DNA of 62,888 nucleotides, counting the filler, from Octopus bimaculoides (taxonomy: Eukaryota): the NCBI RefSeq assembly GCF_001194135.2. It is 5 parts of 5 records of this genome, joined end to end, with 100 filler letters (N's around TTAATTAATTAA, not from the genome) between each part and the next. Parts side by side here need not be neighbours in the genome. Positions count along the whole stretch, not along the records: positions 22,899 to 33,918 come from NC_068986.1; 4 more parts are not named here. One strand, written 5' to 3'. Shown here in pieces: positions 24,431-33,918 of the stretch. How positions within the stretch are numbered: position 1 is the stretch's first letter; the number at the start of each line of letters is the position of its first letter. Both the position numbers and the translations under genes were made by a program. Under the pieces are notes generated by a model. The model was not told the DNA's origin. It worked only from the letters and a program-made list of their open reading frames with translations, and ran no database searches.

Positions 24431-25190
24431 ATAGTAGTAGTAGTAGTAGTAGTAGTAGTAAGGCGGTGAACTGACTGGATCGTTTGCATGATGTACAAAA
24501 TACTTAGCAACATTTGTTTCGGCTCTTTACTTTCTGAGTTCAAATTCTGCCCAGCTCATCTTTGCCTTTCATCCTCTTGGCATCGATAACATTAAATTCT
24601 GGTTAAGTACTGGCGTCGATGTATTCAACTAACCCTCTCTTCAAAACTCCTTGCTCTGAGTCAAAATTTGTTTCATTATTGTTGTCGTTATTGATTCGAG
24701 TCTATATCAGATATTTCCATTATTCTTCAAATCATCCAAACAACAAGATTTGGGAATGCGGGATTATTGTTTGTGAGAGGAAAAAAATTTTGAAAGGCTG
24801 GAAATTGTTTACCACAATATATAGAATTAATGGTGGCCTTGTACTATATTATTTAATGGAATCATGGACATGTTGAAACTATTTCAAACGATATAAACAT
24901 TATTCGTTTATAATTTACAGCGAGATAATATGGTCCAGGGCTCATACTGCTTTAGAAAGAAATATGGGATGGTTATGACTTAATCGTTTTTGATTATGTT
25001 TTCTAGATTAAGGTTGACTGGGGTTAGGCAATGATAATAAGAACAACATAACTGTTCTTAACAGATTTGTTTATTTATTTATATATATATTTGTTTAACC
25101 AAAATATTAACAGTAAACGAAGTGCGTTGTGTTTATGTCAATGGTAATTTTTATGGCAAGTCGAAATATAAAAGCAATTTAAATGTTGGT

Positions 25191-25376
25191 TTACTCGTTT
25201 TTTCGTATAAAGGAGGTAAGCATATTAACATTATTTCGTTTCTTTTCTTTTTTTCTCCAGCTTTTTCCCTCAAAAGTATAACTATAAGTATGTGACTCAT
25301 CTTCAGAAGTCATAATATACCCTAGAGTCTCAGACAGTAATGATACCGTAGCTCTGGGGTACTGACCACCCAGGAA
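25191..25376 (-). CDS. Putative terminal exon of unidentified gene B
   Basis: Strong acceptor tttttaatctgcag, then phase-0 open frame FLGGQYPRATVSLLSETLGYIMTSEDESHTYSYTFEGKSWRKKEKKRNNVNMLTSFIRKNE* in non-repetitive sequence. No family recognised. Confidence 0.5.
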   Translation of the reverse strand, partial: FLGGQYPRATVSLLSETLGYIMTSEDESHTYSYTFEGKSWRKKEKKRNNVNMLTSFIRKNE

Positions 25377-26294
25377 CTGCAGATTAAAAACGCAAACAGT
25401 AGTGCAAAACGTGGCAGTAGAGGGATATTCAGGTATCATGGCCTGGATGTGATTCGAACCCCCTAATAGTATAAGGAGTTTACAGTCGAAACACTTGCAT
25501 TAGCGGGGCACTTCTATGAAGACCTCCTGCTGTTCATCTCTCCCTGGAATACTTTACTACCTTTATATATTTAAATTTAATGCTCACTTTGCAGAGTAAA
25601 ACGCTTAGCGGCATTTTGTCCGTTTTTACATTCTACGCTCAAAATCTGCTGAGGTCAACTTTGCCTTCTATCCTTTTGATGAATAAGTACCTGTTGAGTA
25701 CTGAGGGTCGATGTAATCGACAAGCCCCTTCCTTCGAAACTGCTGGCCTTGTGCCAAAATTTGAAGCCAATATTTAATATTTTCTCCCCGCTCCATATCG
25801 ATGGAAAAGTCTCTTTCGGTTACATGTCTTCAGTATAGAGTAATGGAACAGTAGATAATAATAATATGGATTTAAAATTTTGGCACAAGGCCAGCAATTT
25901 CGAAGAAGAGGGAAATCGATTACATCGACCCCAGTCTCAACTGGTGCTTATTTTATAGACCCCCAAAAGGACGGGGTAGGGCACATAAAGACATGAGAAA
26001 TGTCACTAAGCATTTTGCCTGGCGTGCTCACGACTCTGCCAGCTCACCCTCTTAGTTAAGCACTGAAATTTACCAGGTAATTGTCTCCATTTTAAATTTG
26101 ACAGATAAGAAAAGAAAGAAACTGAAATAGTGTCACTTATACTCTCAGAAATAGATAGAAACAATTTTGAATGTACTTATTTCATATTCTGTCGCAATTT
26201 AACCAAAAGCAATTCAAGTTCGAATTCAAGTGTGCTATGGAAATTTATTAACATGAAGGTTTGTCTTTCTGGAGTGAGAAATAATTGAATCAAA

Positions 26295-26680
26295 TCCAAT
26301 GCATGGACTGTCTTTTTGTCTTTGGCTCACAGTGATGGATCCAACACTCATCCTGAGTTAGGAAACGTTCAAGGAAACCAGCTGCATCTACCTTAAACAA
26401 CGTCATAATTTCCCATGATGTGATCAGCCTAGTGCACTTTTGATCAGTTGTCAGAAGACGTAGCACAGAAACGTTCGTGAACAGAAACTTTCATCATACT
26501 AACTTCATTGTGCAGAATATTCTAAACTCTCTCATGGGATATGCCAATAGCGTCTAGCTCTTTGATTTATAGTCAATTGCCTGTTGTCCATCAGCATGTT
26601 GTGAACAAGATTGATGTTTTCCTCGGTGGTGGCAGTTGCAGGACATCCAGACCTTGGATCACCATCAAGACTCCCCCTTT
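26295..26680 (-). pseudogene. Mariner transposase remnant
   Basis: Frameshifted DGDPRSGCPATATTEENINLVHNMLMDNRQLTI (HTH region) followed by decayed SARWVP and DExW regions. Confidence 0.8.
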
Positions 26681-27545
26681 CCCTCCTTAATCCCCTAATG
26701 TAACAACCATATTAGCAGGAATGTCCCGGGTGGTGGTGGTGGTGGTGGTGGTGGGGATAAATCCTTTATCTGCAGGTACTTTATAACACCACGGTGCTAA
26801 ATTCTGTTCATGTTCAAGAGAAGTTGCTACAAGTTACTTCTGAAGTCTTCTTTAAGCAGTCAAATAGTTTACCTGGAAAGAAACAACGCAGTTATTAATA
26901 AAAAGTGTTGAAATTANNNNNNNNNNNNNNNNNNNNNNNNNNNNNNNNNNNNNNNNNNNNNNNNNNNNNNNNNNNNNNNNNNNNNNNNNNNNNNNNNNNN
27001 NNNNNNNNNNNNNNNNNNNNNNNNNNNNNNNNNNNNNNNNNNNNNNNNNNNNNNNNNNNNNNNNNNNNNNNNNNNNNNNNNNNNNNNNNNNNNNNNNNNN
27101 NNNNNNNNNNNNNNNNNNNNNNNNNNNNNNNNNNNNNNNNNNNNNNNNNNNNNNNNNNNNNNNNNNNNNNNNNNNNNNNNNNNNNNNNNNNNNNNNNNNN
27201 NNNNNNNNNNNNNNNNNNNNNNNNNNNNNNNNNNNNNNNNNNNNNNNNNNNNNNNNNNNNNNNNNNNNNNNNNNNNNNNNNNNNNNNNNNNNNNNNNNNN
27301 NNNNNNNNNNNNNNNNNNNNNNNNNNNNNNNNNNNNNNNNNNNNNNNNNNNNNNNNNNNNNNNNNNNNNNNNNNNNNNNNNNNNNNNNNNNNNNNNNNNN
27401 NNNNNNNNNNNNNNNNNNNNNNNNNNNNNNNNNNNNNNNNNNNNNNNNNNNNNNNNNNNNNNNNNNNNNNNNNGGCACATTGGGCAAGTGTCTTCTACTG
27501 TAGTCTTGTGAGTAGATTTGGTAGAAGGTAACTGCAAGAACCCCG

Positions 27546-27589
<44 letters not shown>

Positions 27590-28031
27590 AAATGGAGAAA
27601 CTGCCACATAACAGAGTATATATATATATTTGTGTGTGTGTGTGTGTGTGTGTGTGTGATGTATATGTACGTGTGTGTGTCTTTGTGTCTGTGTTTGTCA
27701 CCCTCTGCCGCTTAAAACCGGTGTTGTTGTGTTTACGTCCCCATACCTGAGAGGTTCGGCAAAAGCGACTGATAGAATATGTACCAGGCTTTAATAAAAA
27801 TAAGTACTTGGGTCGATTCATTGAACTAAAAGTCCTTCAAGACGGTGCTGCAGCATGGCCACATTCAAATGACTGAAGCAAGTGAAGGATTATACTTACA
27901 TACATGCATACATTTATTTATTCATTCATTCATTAGTTGGGCAGGGGCGCTGTACATTTTTCAGGGTTGCCACTTCTTTGTCGACGGCGTGAAATATAAC
28001 CATTGTGAGAATTTTTACGTGGGCGTTCAAC

Positions 28032-28088
28032 CTGCAACAATTCTTTCATGTGTTCCATAATGGAGCATTTGAATTCCTTAATCACTTC
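28032..28088 (-). CDS. Putative internal exon of gene B (or 5' part of an alternative terminal exon to 27933)
   Basis: atatccgtttag|EVIKEFKCSIMEHMKELLQ|gttgaa. Only the phase-0 frame is open, as the flanking exons require. The donor is weak, and the frame stays open to TAA at 27933-27935. Confidence 0.4.
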
Positions 28089-28889
28089 CTAAACGGATAT
28101 GTCTTTGTAATGAATATTTATGTCCCCATTTTATGTCTAATATACAAAGTTATATATGTTCAACTGAGGAAGCTCTGTCTGCTAATGCCTATTATATCTT
28201 TCAAGAACATATTTCTCTCTCAAGAAAGACGTTAACAACGTATTTCTGTAGTTGTGCACAACCGTAGAAATATTTCTACTGCTACTACTGTTGTCGTTGT
28301 TGTTACTGGTTAGCCCCAACGTCAGATCAAGACCATATTAAGTCAATGAGCAAGAGCATTCCAGCCATGACCATCGCGTTTTTTTGTACTTATATAATGG
28401 ATCTTAGACTATATTGCTCATTATGTCTATGCTGAAGTGTCATGACATCTTGGATAATATGACCATCCCGCCTTTTTTTACTGGCAAGATAAATATAATA
28501 CTATATTATCCGATATGTCGTGGTGGCTCAGCAATGTCATATTAGATAATATGACTAGAACATCTTTTCCCAGTGTACAGAGCACTTTGAAACGCTTTAT
28601 CCAATGATCATAGAGTGTAAATTGAGTAAGATCTGGCTATTATTATTAATAGATGAAACGCCTATGTAGAGGCCCCTCTGCTGGAAGGTATTCCTACTAT
28701 TGTATATACTACTATAGGAATATTTTTCTACTGTACTCACCTGTATTTCTTGATGCTACTAGAGGTGATTCTAGACATAAACTGGCAGTGTTGCTTGAGG
28801 GATAGAATGCCTCACGGAATTTGTTTCGACACGTTGTTCTCTGAGTTCAAATTCCACTTTGGCCAATATATATATATATGTATATATAC

Positions 28890-28961
<72 letters not shown>

Positions 28962-29085
28962 TTTGGATGGTGGAATGATAAAAAAGGACTAATTCAGGTC
29001 GGTGGACCCGGAAACCGATCCAGATCGCTGACCCAGAAACCTTGTTACATGTCTCCGCTCCTTGTGTTCTGAGTTCATATCTCAC

Positions 29086-29269
29086 CGTGGCCTGCTTGGA
29101 AATTAGACTTAATCCATTATCCGGTTTAACAATACCGTCAGGCACCTTGTCTATCTCTAACGGAGTCTCCACTGTTGCAAGTACTCGGATCAGATTTCCA
29201 GTTTGAGGATCCTTCGTTCCTCCAAGCCACCAGTCTTGGAAATCCTTGTAAAAGACTCTGTCTTCCCTT
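29086..29269 (-). CDS. Putative internal exon of gene B, uncharacterised protein
   Basis: ttttttagtattttag acceptor and ACG|gtgaga donor. Single open frame (R)EDRVFYKDFQDWWLGGTKDPQTGNLIRVLATVETPLEIDKVPDGIVKPDNGLSLISKQAT with protein-like composition. Start is 29269 or 29266 (NAGNAG). Confidence 0.65.
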
Positions 29270-30435
29270 CTAAAATACTAAAAAATAGCAACATATGATA
29301 AGAACAAATATCTAAGCTCAATGTGGTAGCTCAAACAGCGTTACGTAGCAGCCAAATCGCCTCGCATCGCCCAACCGACTTAAAATAGAAACAACACCTA
29401 GAATAATGTAGTTTTGAGCACATTGCGCTTAATAAAAGGACTGAAATATCATAGTTGGAAGGATTTTGATCATAGGTATGCTCAGGGAGGGCCGGTTTGG
29501 TGTTAAACAACAACATATTTAGAAACTCCAGTGTATTTGCGACAGCGGTTATTGACAAATTAAATATTTTGTTCTTTTAAGGATCAGCCAAATTAGTAAG
29601 GGCAGCACTCATATTTTTTTTTCTGGGTTTCCATACTGATAAGACGAAGGGAAATTATCCACTGACCGGAAACTTGGACCGAATATTTGTATCAATTGTC
29701 TCAGCTGAAGGCACTCAAGAAGACTGGAGTAATGTGAAATAAAGTGCCTTGCTTAAGGAACAAACGTACTGCCCGGTCCAGAAATCGAACCCGTGACCTT
29801 ATAATCCATAACCACTAGGCCGTGAACCTTCATAGTAGATAATTTATTTCTTCATAATCCTCCAGAGAGACGATAAGGCTACAGTTGTGACTGTCTTTCT
29901 TTTTTTTTTTACTATAAGTTTGCTATATCTTAGTCTAAACAGAAGATAAACAACTTCAGAACCAACAAAATCTTGTTAAATCTAATGTCGAATTATTGAA
30001 CGCCTTAAGTTCAAGATCCCTTTGGAAAGTAGAGGCAAATATGTCACAATTCTCAAAAGAACTATGTTACTTATAATGTTAATGGCATGACCAGTCTTCA
30101 ATCGATAAATGCTGATAAGATTTCGTTTACTTTAAGCGGAACGGTACATAAAACCACCAAAAATTTCATTATCTTGGTATAATATAAAAGAAGGTAACAG
30201 AAGTGGGATTTTTATTTTATGAGTATAAAGTAAAAGATAAAAGCAGATGTGCTTTATTTCTGAGATATAATATAAACTTACTGGCTGTAAAAGCATGGAA
30301 TGGATTTATAAGAACACATTGAAAAAGATGATGTATTGAAACGAGTGCAGAATAGGAATTTCTGCAATAAACAATAAAATACATTCACAAACACCAAAAT
30401 GTTGTCGAAATCACTACATTGCTATCTCCTCCCTA

Positions 30436-30469
<34 letters not shown>

Positions 30470-30592
30470 ATACACACACACATACACAAACGTACATATA
30501 AATAAATAAATGAATATATATATATATACACATGCATAATATGTACATACATGCATACATTCATACACATATGTATAAATACATATATTTAG

Positions 30593-30623
<31 letters not shown>

Positions 30624-31277
30624 ATACGTTTGGATGTATAAAAGAGAGTACACTATGTGAAGTAGAATGTATTTATTCGTTCAATGCTGATGGTTCAACG
30701 CGTCACTCCAATTCCTAACCGTCGAGATACGAACAAACGACCGCGTTCTTGATTGAATATGCCAGCAATTGGTGACCTAGGCTTTCTAACAGTCATGTTT
30801 CTAACTAAAGACATTTTTTTCTTAAATTAAGTTGACATGTAACTGACTAAACAGACATTTTTCCTTCTGATTAAATATTTTCTTTTTTTCATCGAATATC
30901 ACAACACATATTTAAAGGCATATTTTTATGCAAGTTTGTTTACAGACTCAGTAATGTCTCCTCCACTGTTCTACAGCTTTGTTTTCGATACTAAAGACGA
31001 AATTTTAAACCTGTGCTCTCTTACTATTATTACTACCATTACACTAATAACATCATTTATTTAGGTTATTTAAAAAATTTTGGGATGGTAGAGTATATGT
31101 TTTCAGTAAGCCGTAAGCTTAAAGCCTCATGGTTTAACAATCCAGTTCACTATTTTCCACAGTTAGAAGCACAGTTTCTGACACAATATAAGACCGAGAC
31201 TGCAATTTTCTCCTTCGTAACTACTTTTGCCTCAGTCAGAAATAAAGAAACTTTGTCAATTATGACATAGCAATTAC

Positions 31278-31389
31278 CAGTCATGCGAAACATTGACTAT
31301 CTCAACGGCGGCAGCAGTATCAGTGTCTCTTACACGGGAAGTCTCAAAGCGAGAAAATACGACAAATGTGGAATCACTCTCTCTCTCGA
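31278..31389 (-). CDS. Putative gene B exon, copy 1 (identical to 32533-32644)
   Basis: cttttcttgttttcag|TC ERESDSTFVVFSRFETSRVRDTDTAAAVEIVNVSHD TG|gtaatt. 112 bp, phase 1 to 2. Lies in a block duplicated across a gap. Confidence 0.4.
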
Positions 31390-32532
31390 CTGAAAACAAG
31401 AAAAGAAAAAAAGGAACATCTAAATTTCAAGAATCACGGTTTTAGTTGCTTTATTTTTCGTATATACATATATAACATATATATATATATATATATATAT
31501 ATGTTATATATNNNNNNNNNNNNNNNNNNNNNNNNNNNNNNNNNNNNNNNNNNNNNNNNNNNNNNNNNNNNNNNNNNNNNNNNNNNNNNNNNNNNNNNNN
31601 NNNNNNNNNNNNNNNNNNNNNNNNNNNNNNNNNNNNNNNNNNNNNNNNNNNNNNNNNNNNNNNNNNNNNNNNNNNNNNNNNNNNNNNNNNNNNNNNNNNN
31701 NNNNNNNNNNNNNNNNNNNNNNNNNNNNNNNNNNNNNNNNNNNNNNNNNNNNNNNNNNNNNNNNNNNNNNNNNNNNNNNNNNNNNNNNNNNNNNNNNNNN
31801 NNNNNNNNNNNNNNNNNNNNNNNNNNNNNNNNNNNNNNNNNNNNNNNNNNNNNNNNNNNNNNNNNNNNNNNNNNNNNNNNNNNNNNNNNNNNNNNNNNNN
31901 NNNNNNNNNNNNNNNNNNNNNNNNNNNNNNNNNNNNNNNNNNNNNNNNNNNNNNNNNNNNNNNNNNNNNNNNNNNNNNNNNNNNNNNNNNNNNNNNNNNN
32001 NNNNNNNNNNNNNNNNNNNNNNNNNNNNNNNNNNNNNNNNNNNNNNNNNNNNNNNNNNNNNNNNNNNNNNNNNNNNNNNNNNNNNNNNNNNNNNNNNNNN
32101 NNNNNNNNNNNNNNNNNNNNNNNNNNNNNNNNNNNNNNNNNNNNNNNNNNNNNNNNNNNNNNNNNNNNNNNNNNNNNNNNNNNNNNNNNNNNNNNNNNNN
32201 NNNNNNNNNNNNNNNNNNNNNNNNNNNNNNNNNNNNNNNNNNNNNNNNNNNNNNNNNNNNNNNNNNNNNNNNNNNNNNNNNNNNNNNNNNNNNNNNNNNN
32301 NNNNNNNNNNNNNNNNNNNNNNNNNNNNNNNNNNNNNNNNNNNNNNNNNNNNNNNNNNNNNNNNNNNNNNNNNNNNNNNNNNNNNNNNNNNNNNNNNNNN
32401 NNNNNNNNNNNNNNNNNNNNNNNNNNNNNNNNNNNNNNNNNNNNNNNNNNNNNNNNNNNNNNNNNNNNNNNNNNNNNNNNNNNNNNNCAGTCAGAAATAA
32501 AGAAACTTTGTCAATTATGACATAGCAATTAC

Positions 32533-32644
32533 CAGTCATGCGAAACATTGACTATCTCAACGGCGGCAGCAGTATCAGTGTCTCTTACACGGGAAGTCTC
32601 AAAGCGAGAAAATACGACAAATGTGGAATCACTCTCTCTCTCGA
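32533..32644 (-). CDS. Putative gene B exon, copy 2
   Basis: Same sequence and splice sites as 31278-31389 (offset 1255 bp). Confidence 0.45.
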
Positions 32645-32942
32645 CTGAAAACAAGAAAAGAAAAAAAGGAACATCTAAATTTCAAGAATCACGGTTTTAG
32701 TTGCTTTATTTTTCGTATATACATATATAACATATATATATATATATACATATATACGACAGGCTTATTTCAGTTTCTGTCTACCAAATCCACTCACAAG
32801 GGTTTGGTCGGCCCGAGGCTATAGTAGAAGACACTTGCCCAAGGTGCCACGCAGTGGGAATGAACCCGGAACCATGTGGTTGGTAAGCAAGCTACTTACC
32901 ACACAGCTACTCCTGCGCCTATGTATGTATGTATGTACATAC

Positions 32943-32989
32943 TCATCGACCACAACCCAGTGACAAGTATTTTCTCGTAATTGCTTTCT
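32943..32989 (-). CDS. Putative small upstream exon of gene B
   Basis: ccatctcag|A ESNYEKILVTGLWSM A|gtatgt. 47 bp, ends in phase 1, which fits the next exon (A+TC = Ile). Short, so could be chance. Confidence 0.3.
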
Positions 32990-33072
32990 CTGAGATGGAT
33001 TTACGATAATGCATATTCAATTTTGATTTGTTTAACAAACACATTAACAGACTACACGTAACAACTTATACA

Positions 33073-33875
33073 TATTTGGCTGAGTCAAAAGTTTTTTCGT
33101 ATTTCAAGCTTTAATTAGTTCAAACGGATTACATAGCAAAAGCGTTCATTTATCAAAATATAGCTCAGCATATTCTATTGTCTGTTACCATCGTTATGCC
33201 AGAAGCTCAGTTCCACGCTTATAACATTTGGCTTGTGTAGAGGCCAAAAACTCCCTGCACCCATTTTATACCTCACGCATACTGTTGAATCTCCATCCAT
33301 GCAGTAAATTAGCCATGACTCGCAAAAGGTGGTAACCTCGTAGTGCAAGGTCTTGACTGTAGTCGGTAAGGTAACATTTCCAGCCCCTCAGCTTCCTCAA
33401 GTTTGCGCTTGATCACATTGGCATTGTGTTCTTGGGCATTGTCATGTTGTAGGAGCGCACGTCTTGGATTAACCAGTGGCGAATAGCAGGCTTTCAAAGC
33501 ATCCTAAACTTGCTGCAGTTGGTGCACATAAAGTTTTACGTTCACAGTATAACCATCTAGTTCAAAGTGTCACACTCTCTCCAAATTCCACCAAATACAC
33601 AACATGACTGTTTGTTCAAATTGCTCTTGTTTTACAACAGGTCCTGAAGCCTGAACGGAACGATGCCACTGGTTTCTTTTAAGATTACGAAAATAGATTC
33701 ACTTTTCATCCCCATTTACAATTCGACGCCAACAGCGGGCATCTCGAGGATTTGCCAGCAGTTGTTCTCGCGTCGTTTAGCCTGGTCATTGGTCAATTCA
33801 TGAGGAGCTTCTTGACAGTATCTGTTCACAAGGTCGAGCTTATAGAGGTGTCGACTGATGGTGCTTTGTGAAGCA
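33073..33875 (-). pseudogene. Mariner (Mos1-like) transposon remnant
   Basis: Fragments RHLYKLDLVNRYCQEAPHELT and LLQHDNAQEHNANVIKRKL..LEMLPY. TIR-like end tatttggctgagtcaaaagttttttcg near 33073. Confidence 0.85.
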
Positions 33876-33880
33876 CAAGT

Positions 33881-33918
<38 letters not shown>

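What the first reader, a model, noticed from the sequence alone, without database searches (positions are those of the whole stretch)
25191..32989. Unannotated multi-exon gene for an unrecognised protein on the SLC12 strand
Seen: five exon candidates (32943-32989, 32533-32644, 29086-29266, 28032-28088, 25191-25376) with GT-AG sites whose phases chain correctly. Together they give ESNYEKILVTGLWSMIERESDSTFVVFSRFETSRVRDTDTAAAVEIVNVSHDWEDRVFYKDFQDWWLGGTKDPQTGNLIRVLATVETPLEIDKVPDGIVKPDNGLSLISKQATEVIKEFKCSIMEHMKELLQFLGGQYPRATVSLLSETLGYIMTSEDESHTYSYTFEG.. The ORF track shows only fragments of this. I cannot assign a family. I noticed only a faint pattern resemblance (DRV..xTPL..F...LL spacing) to STING-type ligand-binding domains, which I cannot support. 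If SLC12 continues upstream, this is a rare same-strand nested gene.
Basis: partly seen in the sequence, partly recalled or inferred. Interest (0 to 1): 0.7.

Follow-up and report, generated by a model that had tools for sequence, protein, structure and literature searches.

The report
Probable unannotated orphan-gene exons, cephalopod-type DNA
Two of the five proposed exons look like genuine protein-coding exons of a spliced gene with no recognisable relatives, while the other three exons, the hinted STING resemblance and the "nested in SLC12" idea have no support; it is an ordinary candidate lineage-restricted gene that still needs RNA evidence.

Summary
The five minus-strand segments exist as described. 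Only exons 2 (32533-32644) and 3 (29086-29266) stand out from chance. The best exon in 150 simulated sequences averaged 10.2 and never exceeded 18.9. Codon-position-1 G is 0.35 against a null of 0.19.

Exons 1 and 4 score no better than chance candidates. Exon 5 is only the best non-transposon terminal candidate.

Gap 31512-32487 looks like a false gap. Its flanks overlap by 269 nt at 99.6% identity, so exon 2 appears twice. The exon 2/3 join needs the third AG of a TAG..TAG.AAG cluster, and the second AG gives TGA.

No homologue was found in Pfam, PDB sequences, the 5.8-billion-protein database, or (exon 3 only) 1.84 billion representatives. STING is rejected (hhalign probability 0.1%). A local SH3-like "RVFYKDFQDWWLG" motif is not significant.

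Best reading: the 3' part of an unannotated, lineage-restricted protein-coding gene of unknown family. Cephalopod sequence data could not be reached, so expression and conservation remain untested.

The parts
32533..32644 (-). Exon 2 (112 nt), copy to the right of the gap. It encodes (I)ERESDSTFVVFSRFETSRVRDTDTAAAVEIVNVSHD(W). High confidence.
   Evidence: The acceptor tttttcttttcttgttttcag| is at the 99.6th percentile and the donor CTG|gtaatt at the 96.7th. Blind exon-finder score is 19.8, against a null maximum of 18.9. It is the window with the highest codon-position-1 G excess on the strand; G1 is 0.47.
31278..31389 (-). Second, identical copy of exon 2, to the left of the gap. It is probably the same genomic exon assembled twice.
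   Evidence: Block 31233-31501 equals 32488-32756 at 99.6% over 269 nt, and the right copy starts at the first base after the gap.
29086..29266 (-). Exon 3 (181 nt). It encodes EDRVFYKDFQDWWLGGTKDPQTGNLIRVLATVETPLEIDKVPDGIVKPDNGLSLISKQAT. High confidence as an exon; its 5' border is uncertain within 11 nt.
   Evidence: It is the top blind exon-finder hit (23.4), and the donor ACG|gtgaga is at the 99.1st percentile. It is the top protein-likeness segment of the piece. The in-frame stop lies 11 nt upstream of the acceptor.
29267..29280 (-). Acceptor cluster ttttttAG tattttAG aAG upstream of exon 3.
   Evidence: The three AGs would start the exon at 29277, 29269 and 29266. After the exon 2 donor at 32533, a start at 29277 shifts to a frame that stops after about 29 codons (my reading of the sequence and the frames). 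A start at 29269 gives TGA. A start at 29266 gives TGG and keeps the frame.
32589..32589 (-). Alternative phase-0 donor CGT|gtaaga inside exon 2. Joined to the first AG (exon start 29277), it is also in frame and reads ...FETSR|YFRREDRV...
   Evidence: The donor is at the 94th percentile. It is disfavoured because the 19 codons it would remove are strongly coding-like (11 of 19 start with G; my count from the sequence). The top G1-excess window, 32535-32633, covers them.
25191..25376 (-). Exon 5, the candidate terminal exon (FLGGQYPR...FIRKNE, stop at 25191-25193). Low to moderate confidence.
   Evidence: The acceptor is at the 94.3rd percentile. The coding score is weak. It ranks 5th of 136 phase-0 terminal candidates, and the four above it lie in repeat-derived sequence as I read it. 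It is in frame with exon 3 with or without exon 4.
25070..25075 (-). AATAAA (tandem AAATAAATAAAC) 115 nt after the stop; a possible polyadenylation signal.
   Evidence: The motif is common in AT-rich DNA, so this is weak support.
32943..32989 (-). Exon 1 (47 nt, ESNYEKILVTGLWSM). Not distinguishable from chance.
   Evidence: The acceptor is at the 82.7th percentile and the donor at the 74.6th. G1 is 0.27 over 15 codons.
28032..28088 (-). Exon 4 (57 nt, EVIKEFKCSIMEHMKELLQ). Not distinguishable from chance and not needed to keep the frame.
   Evidence: The acceptor is at the 70th percentile and the donor CAG|gttgaa at the 68th. The total score is -4.3, below other phase-compatible candidates.
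31512..32487 (.). Assembly gap whose flanks overlap; probably a false gap at a (TA)n tract.
26917..27473 (.). Assembly gap inside the proposed intron 4. The flanks do not overlap and the content is unknown.
32710..32920 (-). SINE copy filling most of intron 1. Its (TA)n tail is where the assembly broke.
   Evidence: It matches 27474-27592. The tRNA-like head ggcgcaggagtagctgtgtggtaag... starts about 25 nt after exon 1. Calling it an octopus-type SINE rests on my memory, not on a tool.

Best explanation
The region holds the 3' part of a spliced, minus-strand protein-coding gene that has no detectable relatives and is probably restricted to a cephalopod lineage.

Shown:
- Exons 2 and 3 have strong splice signals placed exactly at the ends of unique open frames with coding-type composition.
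- They sit in non-repeated sequence, and their phases are compatible.

Inferred:
- The pre-mRNA is spliced exon 2 to exon 3 at the AAG|G acceptor, which makes a Trp codon.
- It may continue to a terminal exon at 25191-25376. That exon could equally lie elsewhere, in the unread gap or beyond the piece.
- The 5' exons lie beyond 33918.
- Exons 2 and 3 give about 98 residues of an acidic (pI 4.5), soluble segment without cysteines.
- There is no membrane segment and no catalytic motif, so my best guess is a protein-binding module rather than an enzyme.
For: - The peptide and splice borders are reproduced.
- Splice-site percentiles are 99.6 and 96.7 for exon 2, and 95.9 and 99.1 for exon 3.
- The blind exon finder returns exactly these two exons as the top hits (23.4 and 19.8). 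The null top score over 150 simulations was 10.2 +/- 2.5 with a maximum of 18.9, and the best plus-strand exon scored 10.4.
- G at codon position 1 is 0.35 against 0.19 +/- 0.03, and exon GC is 0.46 against 0.37 for the background.
- The exon 3 frame is the most protein-like segment of the piece.
- The exons do not overlap any repeat detected within the piece.
- Stops appear within 11 nt outside the exon borders.
- There is no membrane segment (maximum Kyte-Doolittle 0.65) and the pI is 4.5.
Against: - No protein in a 5.8-billion-protein database shares these exons. That database does hold annotated animal proteomes and transcript assemblies.
- An exhaustive search with exon 3 found only a spurious bacterial repeat protein.
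- So no annotation, transcript or conservation supports the gene. A LINE control found no near-identical cephalopod hits either, so cephalopod coverage of these databases is unproven.
- The exon 2/3 junction needs the third AG in a 14-nt cluster, and the second AG gives TGA.
- Exons 1, 4 and 5 are weak.
Confidence: 0.6

Rival explanations
1. Exons 2 and 3 are real or former exons, but the locus is no longer, or never was, translated. It could be a decaying gene, an NMD-prone or non-coding transcript, or exons of a differently built gene whose other exons lie outside the piece.
For: - No annotated or assembled protein contains them.
One shifts the frame to an early stop and the other gives TGA.
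- The remaining three exons are at chance level or weak.
Against: - Both exons keep intact open frames with strong coding composition.
- An in-frame join does exist.
- The databases may simply lack cephalopod data.
Confidence: 0.22
2. This is a chance coincidence of open frames and GT/AG dinucleotides in AT-rich, repeat-rich non-coding DNA.
For: - Open frames of about 100 codons are expected about once in 11 kb at this base composition (my estimate).
- Exons 1 and 4 are indeed chance-like.
Against: - Two exons on one strand each exceed the best exon of all 150 simulated sequences.
- The codon-position-1 G excess is about 5 standard deviations.
- The plus strand and the rest of the minus strand yield nothing comparable.
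Confidence: 0.06
3. The exons are relics of a transposon or viral gene, not a host gene.
For: By my reading, backed, the piece is full of mobile-element remains: SINE copies, a LINE fragment with an intact 154-residue frame, and mariner-like frames. Such relics keep coding composition.
Against: - The exons lie in sequence that is unique within the piece.
- There was no hit to any Pfam family, any viral contig (one pattern-seeded spurious hit) or any open frame on invertebrate holobiont contigs. The LINE frame did find such relatives.
- Strong splice signals sit exactly at the frame ends.
Confidence: 0.07
4. The peptide is a very divergent STING-type cyclic-dinucleotide-binding domain.
For: By eye there is a DRV...TPL pair and a later helix with F..C, which is reminiscent of human STING residues 237-239, 263-265 and helix alpha3 (from my memory of the sequence).
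Against: - There is no PF15009 hit at E<=10 and no STING chain among the PDB hits.
- BLASTP against the human STING C-terminal domain finds nothing aligned.
- hhalign probability is 0.1%.
- In an unfiltered hmmsearch the peptide does not appear among the best-scoring frames, all of them random open frames at about 1 bit or less.
- The Arg-to-Thr spacing is 31 residues against 25 in human STING. The E and A of the E.ATPL motif, invariant in the 14 sequences, are missing; the peptide reads TVETPL.
Confidence: 0.02

Closest known systems
Taxonomically restricted ('orphan') protein-coding genes of animal genomes
   Same: It is a spliced, multi-exon gene with intact open frames and coding composition. 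It has no detectable homologue in family libraries or large protein databases.
   Different: Expression, translation and conservation within cephalopods are untested here. Only two exons are secure, and the 5' end lies outside the piece.
SH3 domains, best match the SH3 of Jouberin/AHI1 (PDB 4ESR)
   Same: There is a local motif: RVFYKDFQDWWLGGTKDPQTG against [21 protein letters not shown], with 12 of 21 residues identical. In a by-eye alignment, the distance from an ALYDY-equivalent position to the WW is the same as in c-Src.
   Different: - There is no Pfam SH3 hit.
- The E-value against PDB sequences is 0.045-0.07.
- My 17-sequence SH3 model gives 4.9 bits, which 10 of 2000 shuffles reach.
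- hhalign probability is 6% over 17 columns.
- The ALYDY aromatic residues and the invariant Pro of the P.NYV segment (invariant in all 17 SH3 sequences) are absent.
STING (TMEM173, Pfam PF15009) ligand-binding domain
   Same: Only a by-eye DRV / TPL / helix pattern.
   Different: All sequence and profile tests were negative. The invariant motif residues and their spacing are not kept.
PWWP domain of LEDGF/p75 (PSIP1)
   Same: There is a short local match: IDKVPDGIVKP against VDEVPDGAVKP.
   Different: The E-value is 0.27-1.6. The PHWP motif is replaced by ETP-L, and there is no Pfam PWWP hit. I treat it as chance.

Membership tests
Spliceosomal protein-coding gene (generic) | GT-AG introns with consensus-like splice signals at the exon borders | tested here: met
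   Exons 2 and 3 are at the 95.9th-99.6th percentile of all AG/GT sites on the strand. Exons 1 and 4 are only at the 68th-83rd.
Spliceosomal protein-coding gene (generic) | Open frames with coding-type composition confined to the exons, and compatible phases | tested here: met
   G1 is 0.35 against 0.19. These are the top blind exon-finder hits. Stops lie within 11 nt outside the borders. The phases chain, although the exon 2/3 join needs the third AG of a cluster.
Spliceosomal protein-coding gene (generic) | Transcript evidence (spliced reads or cDNA) | not testable with these tools
   No cephalopod RNA data could be reached. No transcript-derived protein in the database contains the exons, but coverage of cephalopods is unproven.
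Spliceosomal protein-coding gene (generic) | Conservation under purifying selection in related species | not testable with these tools
   No cephalopod genome collection is available. Protein and contig searches were negative.
STING (PF15009) | Significant match to the STING family profile | tested here: not met
   Pfam gave 0 hits at E<=10. hhalign probability is 0.1%. hmmsearch --max scores the peptide below random open frames.
STING (PF15009) | Conserved ligand-contact motif: R238, and E260/T263 in E.ATPL, at fixed spacing | tested here: not met
   E, A and P of the motif are invariant in the 14-sequence alignment. The peptide reads TVETPL, and its Arg-to-Thr distance is 31 rather than 25.
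STING (PF15009) | N-terminal transmembrane or TIR module, and the dimerisation helix with Y167 | not testable with these tools
   These would lie upstream of 33918, outside the piece.
STING (PF15009) | STING fold of the joined peptide | not testable with these tools
Exon 3 alone gave pLDDT 51, which is uninformative.
SH3 domain | Significant match to SH3 profiles over the whole ~55-residue domain | tested here: not met
   There is no Pfam SH3 hit. My own HMM gave 4.9 bits over 19 residues. hhalign probability is 6% over 17 columns.
SH3 domain | ALYDY aromatic residues, WW, and the Pro of the P.NYV segment | tested here: inconclusive
   WW followed by G is present (DWWLGG). The ALYDY-equivalent reads VRDTD, and the invariant Pro is absent. 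The pairwise score against the AHI1 SH3 is 65 against 31.6 +/- 4.7 for shuffles. That family was picked post hoc from a database search with E=0.045-0.07.
Transposable-element or viral gene relic | Repeated copies, or homology to mobile-element or viral proteins | tested here: not met
   The exons are unique within the piece. There are no Pfam, viral or holobiont open-frame relatives. Copy number in the whole genome could not be tested.

The most novel reading that the evidence does not exclude
Exons 2 and 3 belong to an expressed, cephalopod-restricted gene. Its product carries a previously undescribed small beta-rich domain, possibly a highly derived SH3-like barrel that keeps the DWWLG strand but has lost the proline-peptide-binding residues. 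That would make it a new protein family missed by the public annotations represented in the searched database.
Probability: 0.12. Interest if true: 0.45.

Novelty: new member of a known kind. Interest (0 to 1): 0.3.

Why it matters
If confirmed, it would add one unannotated, lineage-restricted gene to a cephalopod gene catalogue. It would also show that simple intrinsic signals can recover exons that annotation pipelines missed in repeat-rich, gap-ridden scaffolds. It does not open a new mechanism or settle an open question.

The practical lessons are these:
- The gap at 31512-32487 looks like a false duplication that would corrupt any gene model built across it.
- The STING and nested-gene ideas should not be carried forward.

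Tried and rejected
- Family and structure-sequence libraries gave nothing usable. Pfam on the joined peptide and on four alternative joins gave 0 relevant hits. PADLOC gave 0 hits. PDB sequence searches gave only sub-threshold hits: a glycosyltransferase, the Jouberin SH3 and the LEDGF PWWP.
- The 5.8-billion-protein search with the joined peptide found none.
- The exhaustive 1.84-billion-representative search with exon 3 found one hit, P0028. This is a 5589-residue bacterial surface-repeat protein whose E-value is inflated by nine weak repeat matches, so I rejected it.
- The metagenome contig scan found none. The viral contig scan found one hit, seeded by the exact pattern DGIVKPDN with nothing around it, so I rejected it.
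- Exact-product look-ups of three window open frames found nothing on record.
- A full-text search for six tryptic peptides found 0 papers.
- Rfam and tRNA scans of the piece found nothing.
- STING was rejected.
- SH3 was tested with an HMM, hhalign and pairwise alignment against shuffles. There is only a local motif, so membership is not supported.
- The database control with the LINE frame found only 50-62% identical open frames on ENA holobiont contigs. Negative results therefore do not prove absence from cephalopods.
I did not try to get round this. Exon 3 alone folded at pLDDT 51, so no fold search was run.

Full report
**Scope**

Only 22899-33918 is genome; the rest of the window is N or linker. 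The piece has 37% G+C. By my reading it is full of mobile-element remains and microsatellites.

**Gaps (tested first, as asked)**

- Neither gap cuts an exon or a reading frame. Both lie in proposed introns.
- Gap 31512-32487: the 269 nt at 31233-31501 are 99.6% identical to 32488-32756.
  - The right-hand copy begins at the very first base after the gap.
  - The left-hand copy ends in a (TA)n tract at the gap edge.
  - This is the signature of two contigs that overlap but were scaffolded with an estimated gap.
  - Using both copies would add 224 nt and break the frame, so a single copy is the sensible reading.
- Gap 26917-27473: no overlap between the flanks was found, so its content is unknown.

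**The observation**

Each is preceded by AG, and the first four are followed by GT.
- Joining them reproduces the peptide exactly. After ...TFEG it runs on as KSWRKKEKKRNNVNMLTSFIRKNE and stops at 25191-25193.

**Is it more than chance?**

I scored every AG and GT on the strand with simple consensus weights taken from general knowledge of metazoan splice sites.

| Exon | Acceptor percentile | Donor percentile |
|---|---|---|
| 1 | 82.7 | 74.6 |
| 2 | 99.6 | 96.7 |
| 3 | 95.9 | 99.1 |
| 4 | 70.1 | 67.9 |
| 5 | 94.3 | not applicable (terminal) |

- **Blind exon finder.** It adds acceptor score, donor score and amino-acid log-odds over every open AG...GT interval of 50-400 nt.
  - In 150 second-order Markov simulations the best exon scored 10.2 +/- 2.5, with a maximum of 18.9.
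  - The best plus-strand exon scored 10.4.
- **Composition.**
  - G at codon position 1 is 0.35 in the joined coding sequence, against 0.19 +/- 0.03 for other open frames of the piece. It is 0.47 in exon 2 and 0.37 in exon 3.
  - Exons 2 and 3 have 46% G+C.
  - The exon 3 frame is the most protein-like segment of the whole piece, ahead of a genuine LINE frame.
  - The window with the strongest position-1 G excess on the strand is exon 2.
  - Stops close the frames within a few bases outside the borders.
  - The exons do not overlap any repeat detectable within the piece.
- **Conclusion for exons 2 and 3.** I regard them as real exons, present or past.
- **Exons 1 and 4.** They are no better than many chance candidates. 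Exon 4 totals -4.3 and is outscored by other phase-compatible candidates. Exon 4 is 57 nt and exon 3 ends in phase 0, so exon 3 joins exon 5 in frame with or without it.
- **Exon 5.** It has a decent acceptor but a weak coding score. It ranks fifth of 136 phase-0 terminal candidates downstream of exon 3. The four above it lie in what I read as SINE, mariner-like and LINE sequence. An AATAAA lies 115 nt after its stop, which is weak support in AT-rich DNA.

**A weak point in the best junction**

- Upstream of exon 3 there are three AGs within 14 nt (ttttttAG tattttAG aAG|G).
- After the exon 2 donor at 32533, only the third AG keeps the frame, by making TGG. The second gives TGA. By my reading of the sequence, the first shifts to a frame that stops after about 29 codons.
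- A second in-frame solution exists: donor 32589 (CGT|gtaaga, 94th percentile) joined to the first AG, giving ...FETSR|YFRREDRV....
- Only RNA can decide.

**What is it?**

- No family was found.
  - Pfam gives nothing at E<=10 for the joined peptide or for four alternative joins.
  - PADLOC gives nothing.
  - PDB sequences give only sub-threshold hits.
- The 5.8-billion-protein database holds no protein sharing these exons.
- That database does contain annotated animal proteomes and transcript assemblies. A STING query returned NCBI, UniRef, nr and Logan entries, including a hemichordate.
- A control with the 154-residue LINE frame of this piece returned only 50-62% identical open frames on ENA holobiont contigs. 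It returned nothing cephalopod-like. Coverage of cephalopods is therefore unproven, and I do not read the negative as proof of absence.
- The exhaustive search of 1.84 billion representatives with exon 3 gave one hit, a bacterial 5589-residue repeat protein. Its E-value comes from nine weak repeat matches, so it is spurious.
- Metagenome and viral contig scans gave nothing real.

**STING**

- There is no PF15009 hit.
- BLASTP against the human C-terminal domain aligns nothing.
- hhalign against a 14-sequence vertebrate-to-hemichordate profile gives probability 0.1%.
- With all HMMER filters off, the joined peptide and its exon frames score below random frames of the piece.
- The invariant E and A of E.ATPL are missing, and the Arg-to-Thr spacing is 31 instead of 25.

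**SH3 lead**

- The best PDB hit is the SH3 of Jouberin/AHI1, with RVFYKDFQDWWLGGTKDPQTG against [21 protein letters not shown] (E=0.045-0.07).
- Against shuffles, the pairwise score is high: 65 against 31.6 +/- 4.7. But the family was chosen after the search.
- A 17-sequence SH3 model gives only 4.9 bits, which 10 of 2000 shuffles reach.
- hhalign gives 6% over 17 columns.
- The ALYDY aromatic residues and the invariant Pro are absent.
- I record it as an unexplained local resemblance, not as membership.

**Likely nature of the product (inference)**

- Exons 2 and 3 give about 98 residues, pI 4.5, with no cysteine.
- The full model has no membrane segment.
That suggests a soluble binding module rather than an enzyme.
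Exon 3 alone gave pLDDT 51, which is meaningless.

**Verdict**

- This is probably the 3' part of an unannotated, lineage-restricted, spliced protein-coding gene. Two exons are secure and three are doubtful.
- The STING idea is rejected.
- The SLC12 nesting idea is void, because that exon belongs to an unrelated piece.
- The finding is ordinary in kind. It is worth a line in a re-annotation, pending RNA evidence.

Noticed in passing
window 31233-31501 and 32488-32756: A 269-nt block is duplicated at 99.6% identity on both sides of the 976-N gap. The right copy starts at the first base after the gap, and the left copy ends in (TA)n. This is probably an unmerged contig overlap, i.e. a false gap and a false duplication of one exon.
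   Followed up: yes
window 23570-24034 (-), extending to about 24355: There is an intact 154-residue frame (MCGERSETVWHIVGECPKLAQRK...). It is 50-62% identical to open frames that sit next to RVT_1 reverse-transcriptase frames on ENA holobiont contigs. It is the 3' end of a LINE-type retrotransposon, with frame-shifted upstream parts.
   Followed up: partly
window 22901-23182, 23191-23385, 24393-24670, 25598-25774, 25871-26054, 27474-27592, 32710-32920: At least seven copies of one SINE family, 69-80% alike. They include a head-to-head inverted pair (25682-25952) and one copy that fills most of the proposed intron 1. The tRNA-like head is not recognised by ARAGORN or Rfam. I recognise the element from memory as an octopus-type SINE, which is the only basis for calling the piece cephalopod.
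   Followed up: partly
window 26290-26711 (-) and 33178-33916 (-): There are broken frames that look like mariner/Tc1-type transposase remains, such as FLERFLTQDECWIHHCEPKTKRQSMHW and LLQHDNAQEHNANV. Pfam gave no hit, so this rests on my recognition only.
   Followed up: partly
window 22899-22968, 23380-23495, 24359-24460, 27548-27698, 28866-28959, 30455-30621, 33882-33913: There are many microsatellites: (ATT)n, (TAG)n, (AT)n, (TG)n and (AC)n. Several create long spurious open frames, for example the IYIYIY stretch that extends the exon 3 frame to 168 codons.
   Followed up: yes
window 29146-29208 (-) and 29086-29160 (-): Two short local resemblances to SH3-like barrel domains sit inside exon 3. 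RVFYKDFQDWWLGGTKDPQTG resembles the AHI1 SH3 (12 of 21 identical). IDKVPDGIVKP resembles VDEVPDGAVKP of the LEDGF PWWP domain. Neither is significant.
   Followed up: yes
window 32943-32945 (-): The last full codon of the weak exon 1 is ATG (TCG ATG A|TC). If exon 1 were real, translation could start there and give a 179-residue protein. The start context is poor (T at -3).
   Followed up: no
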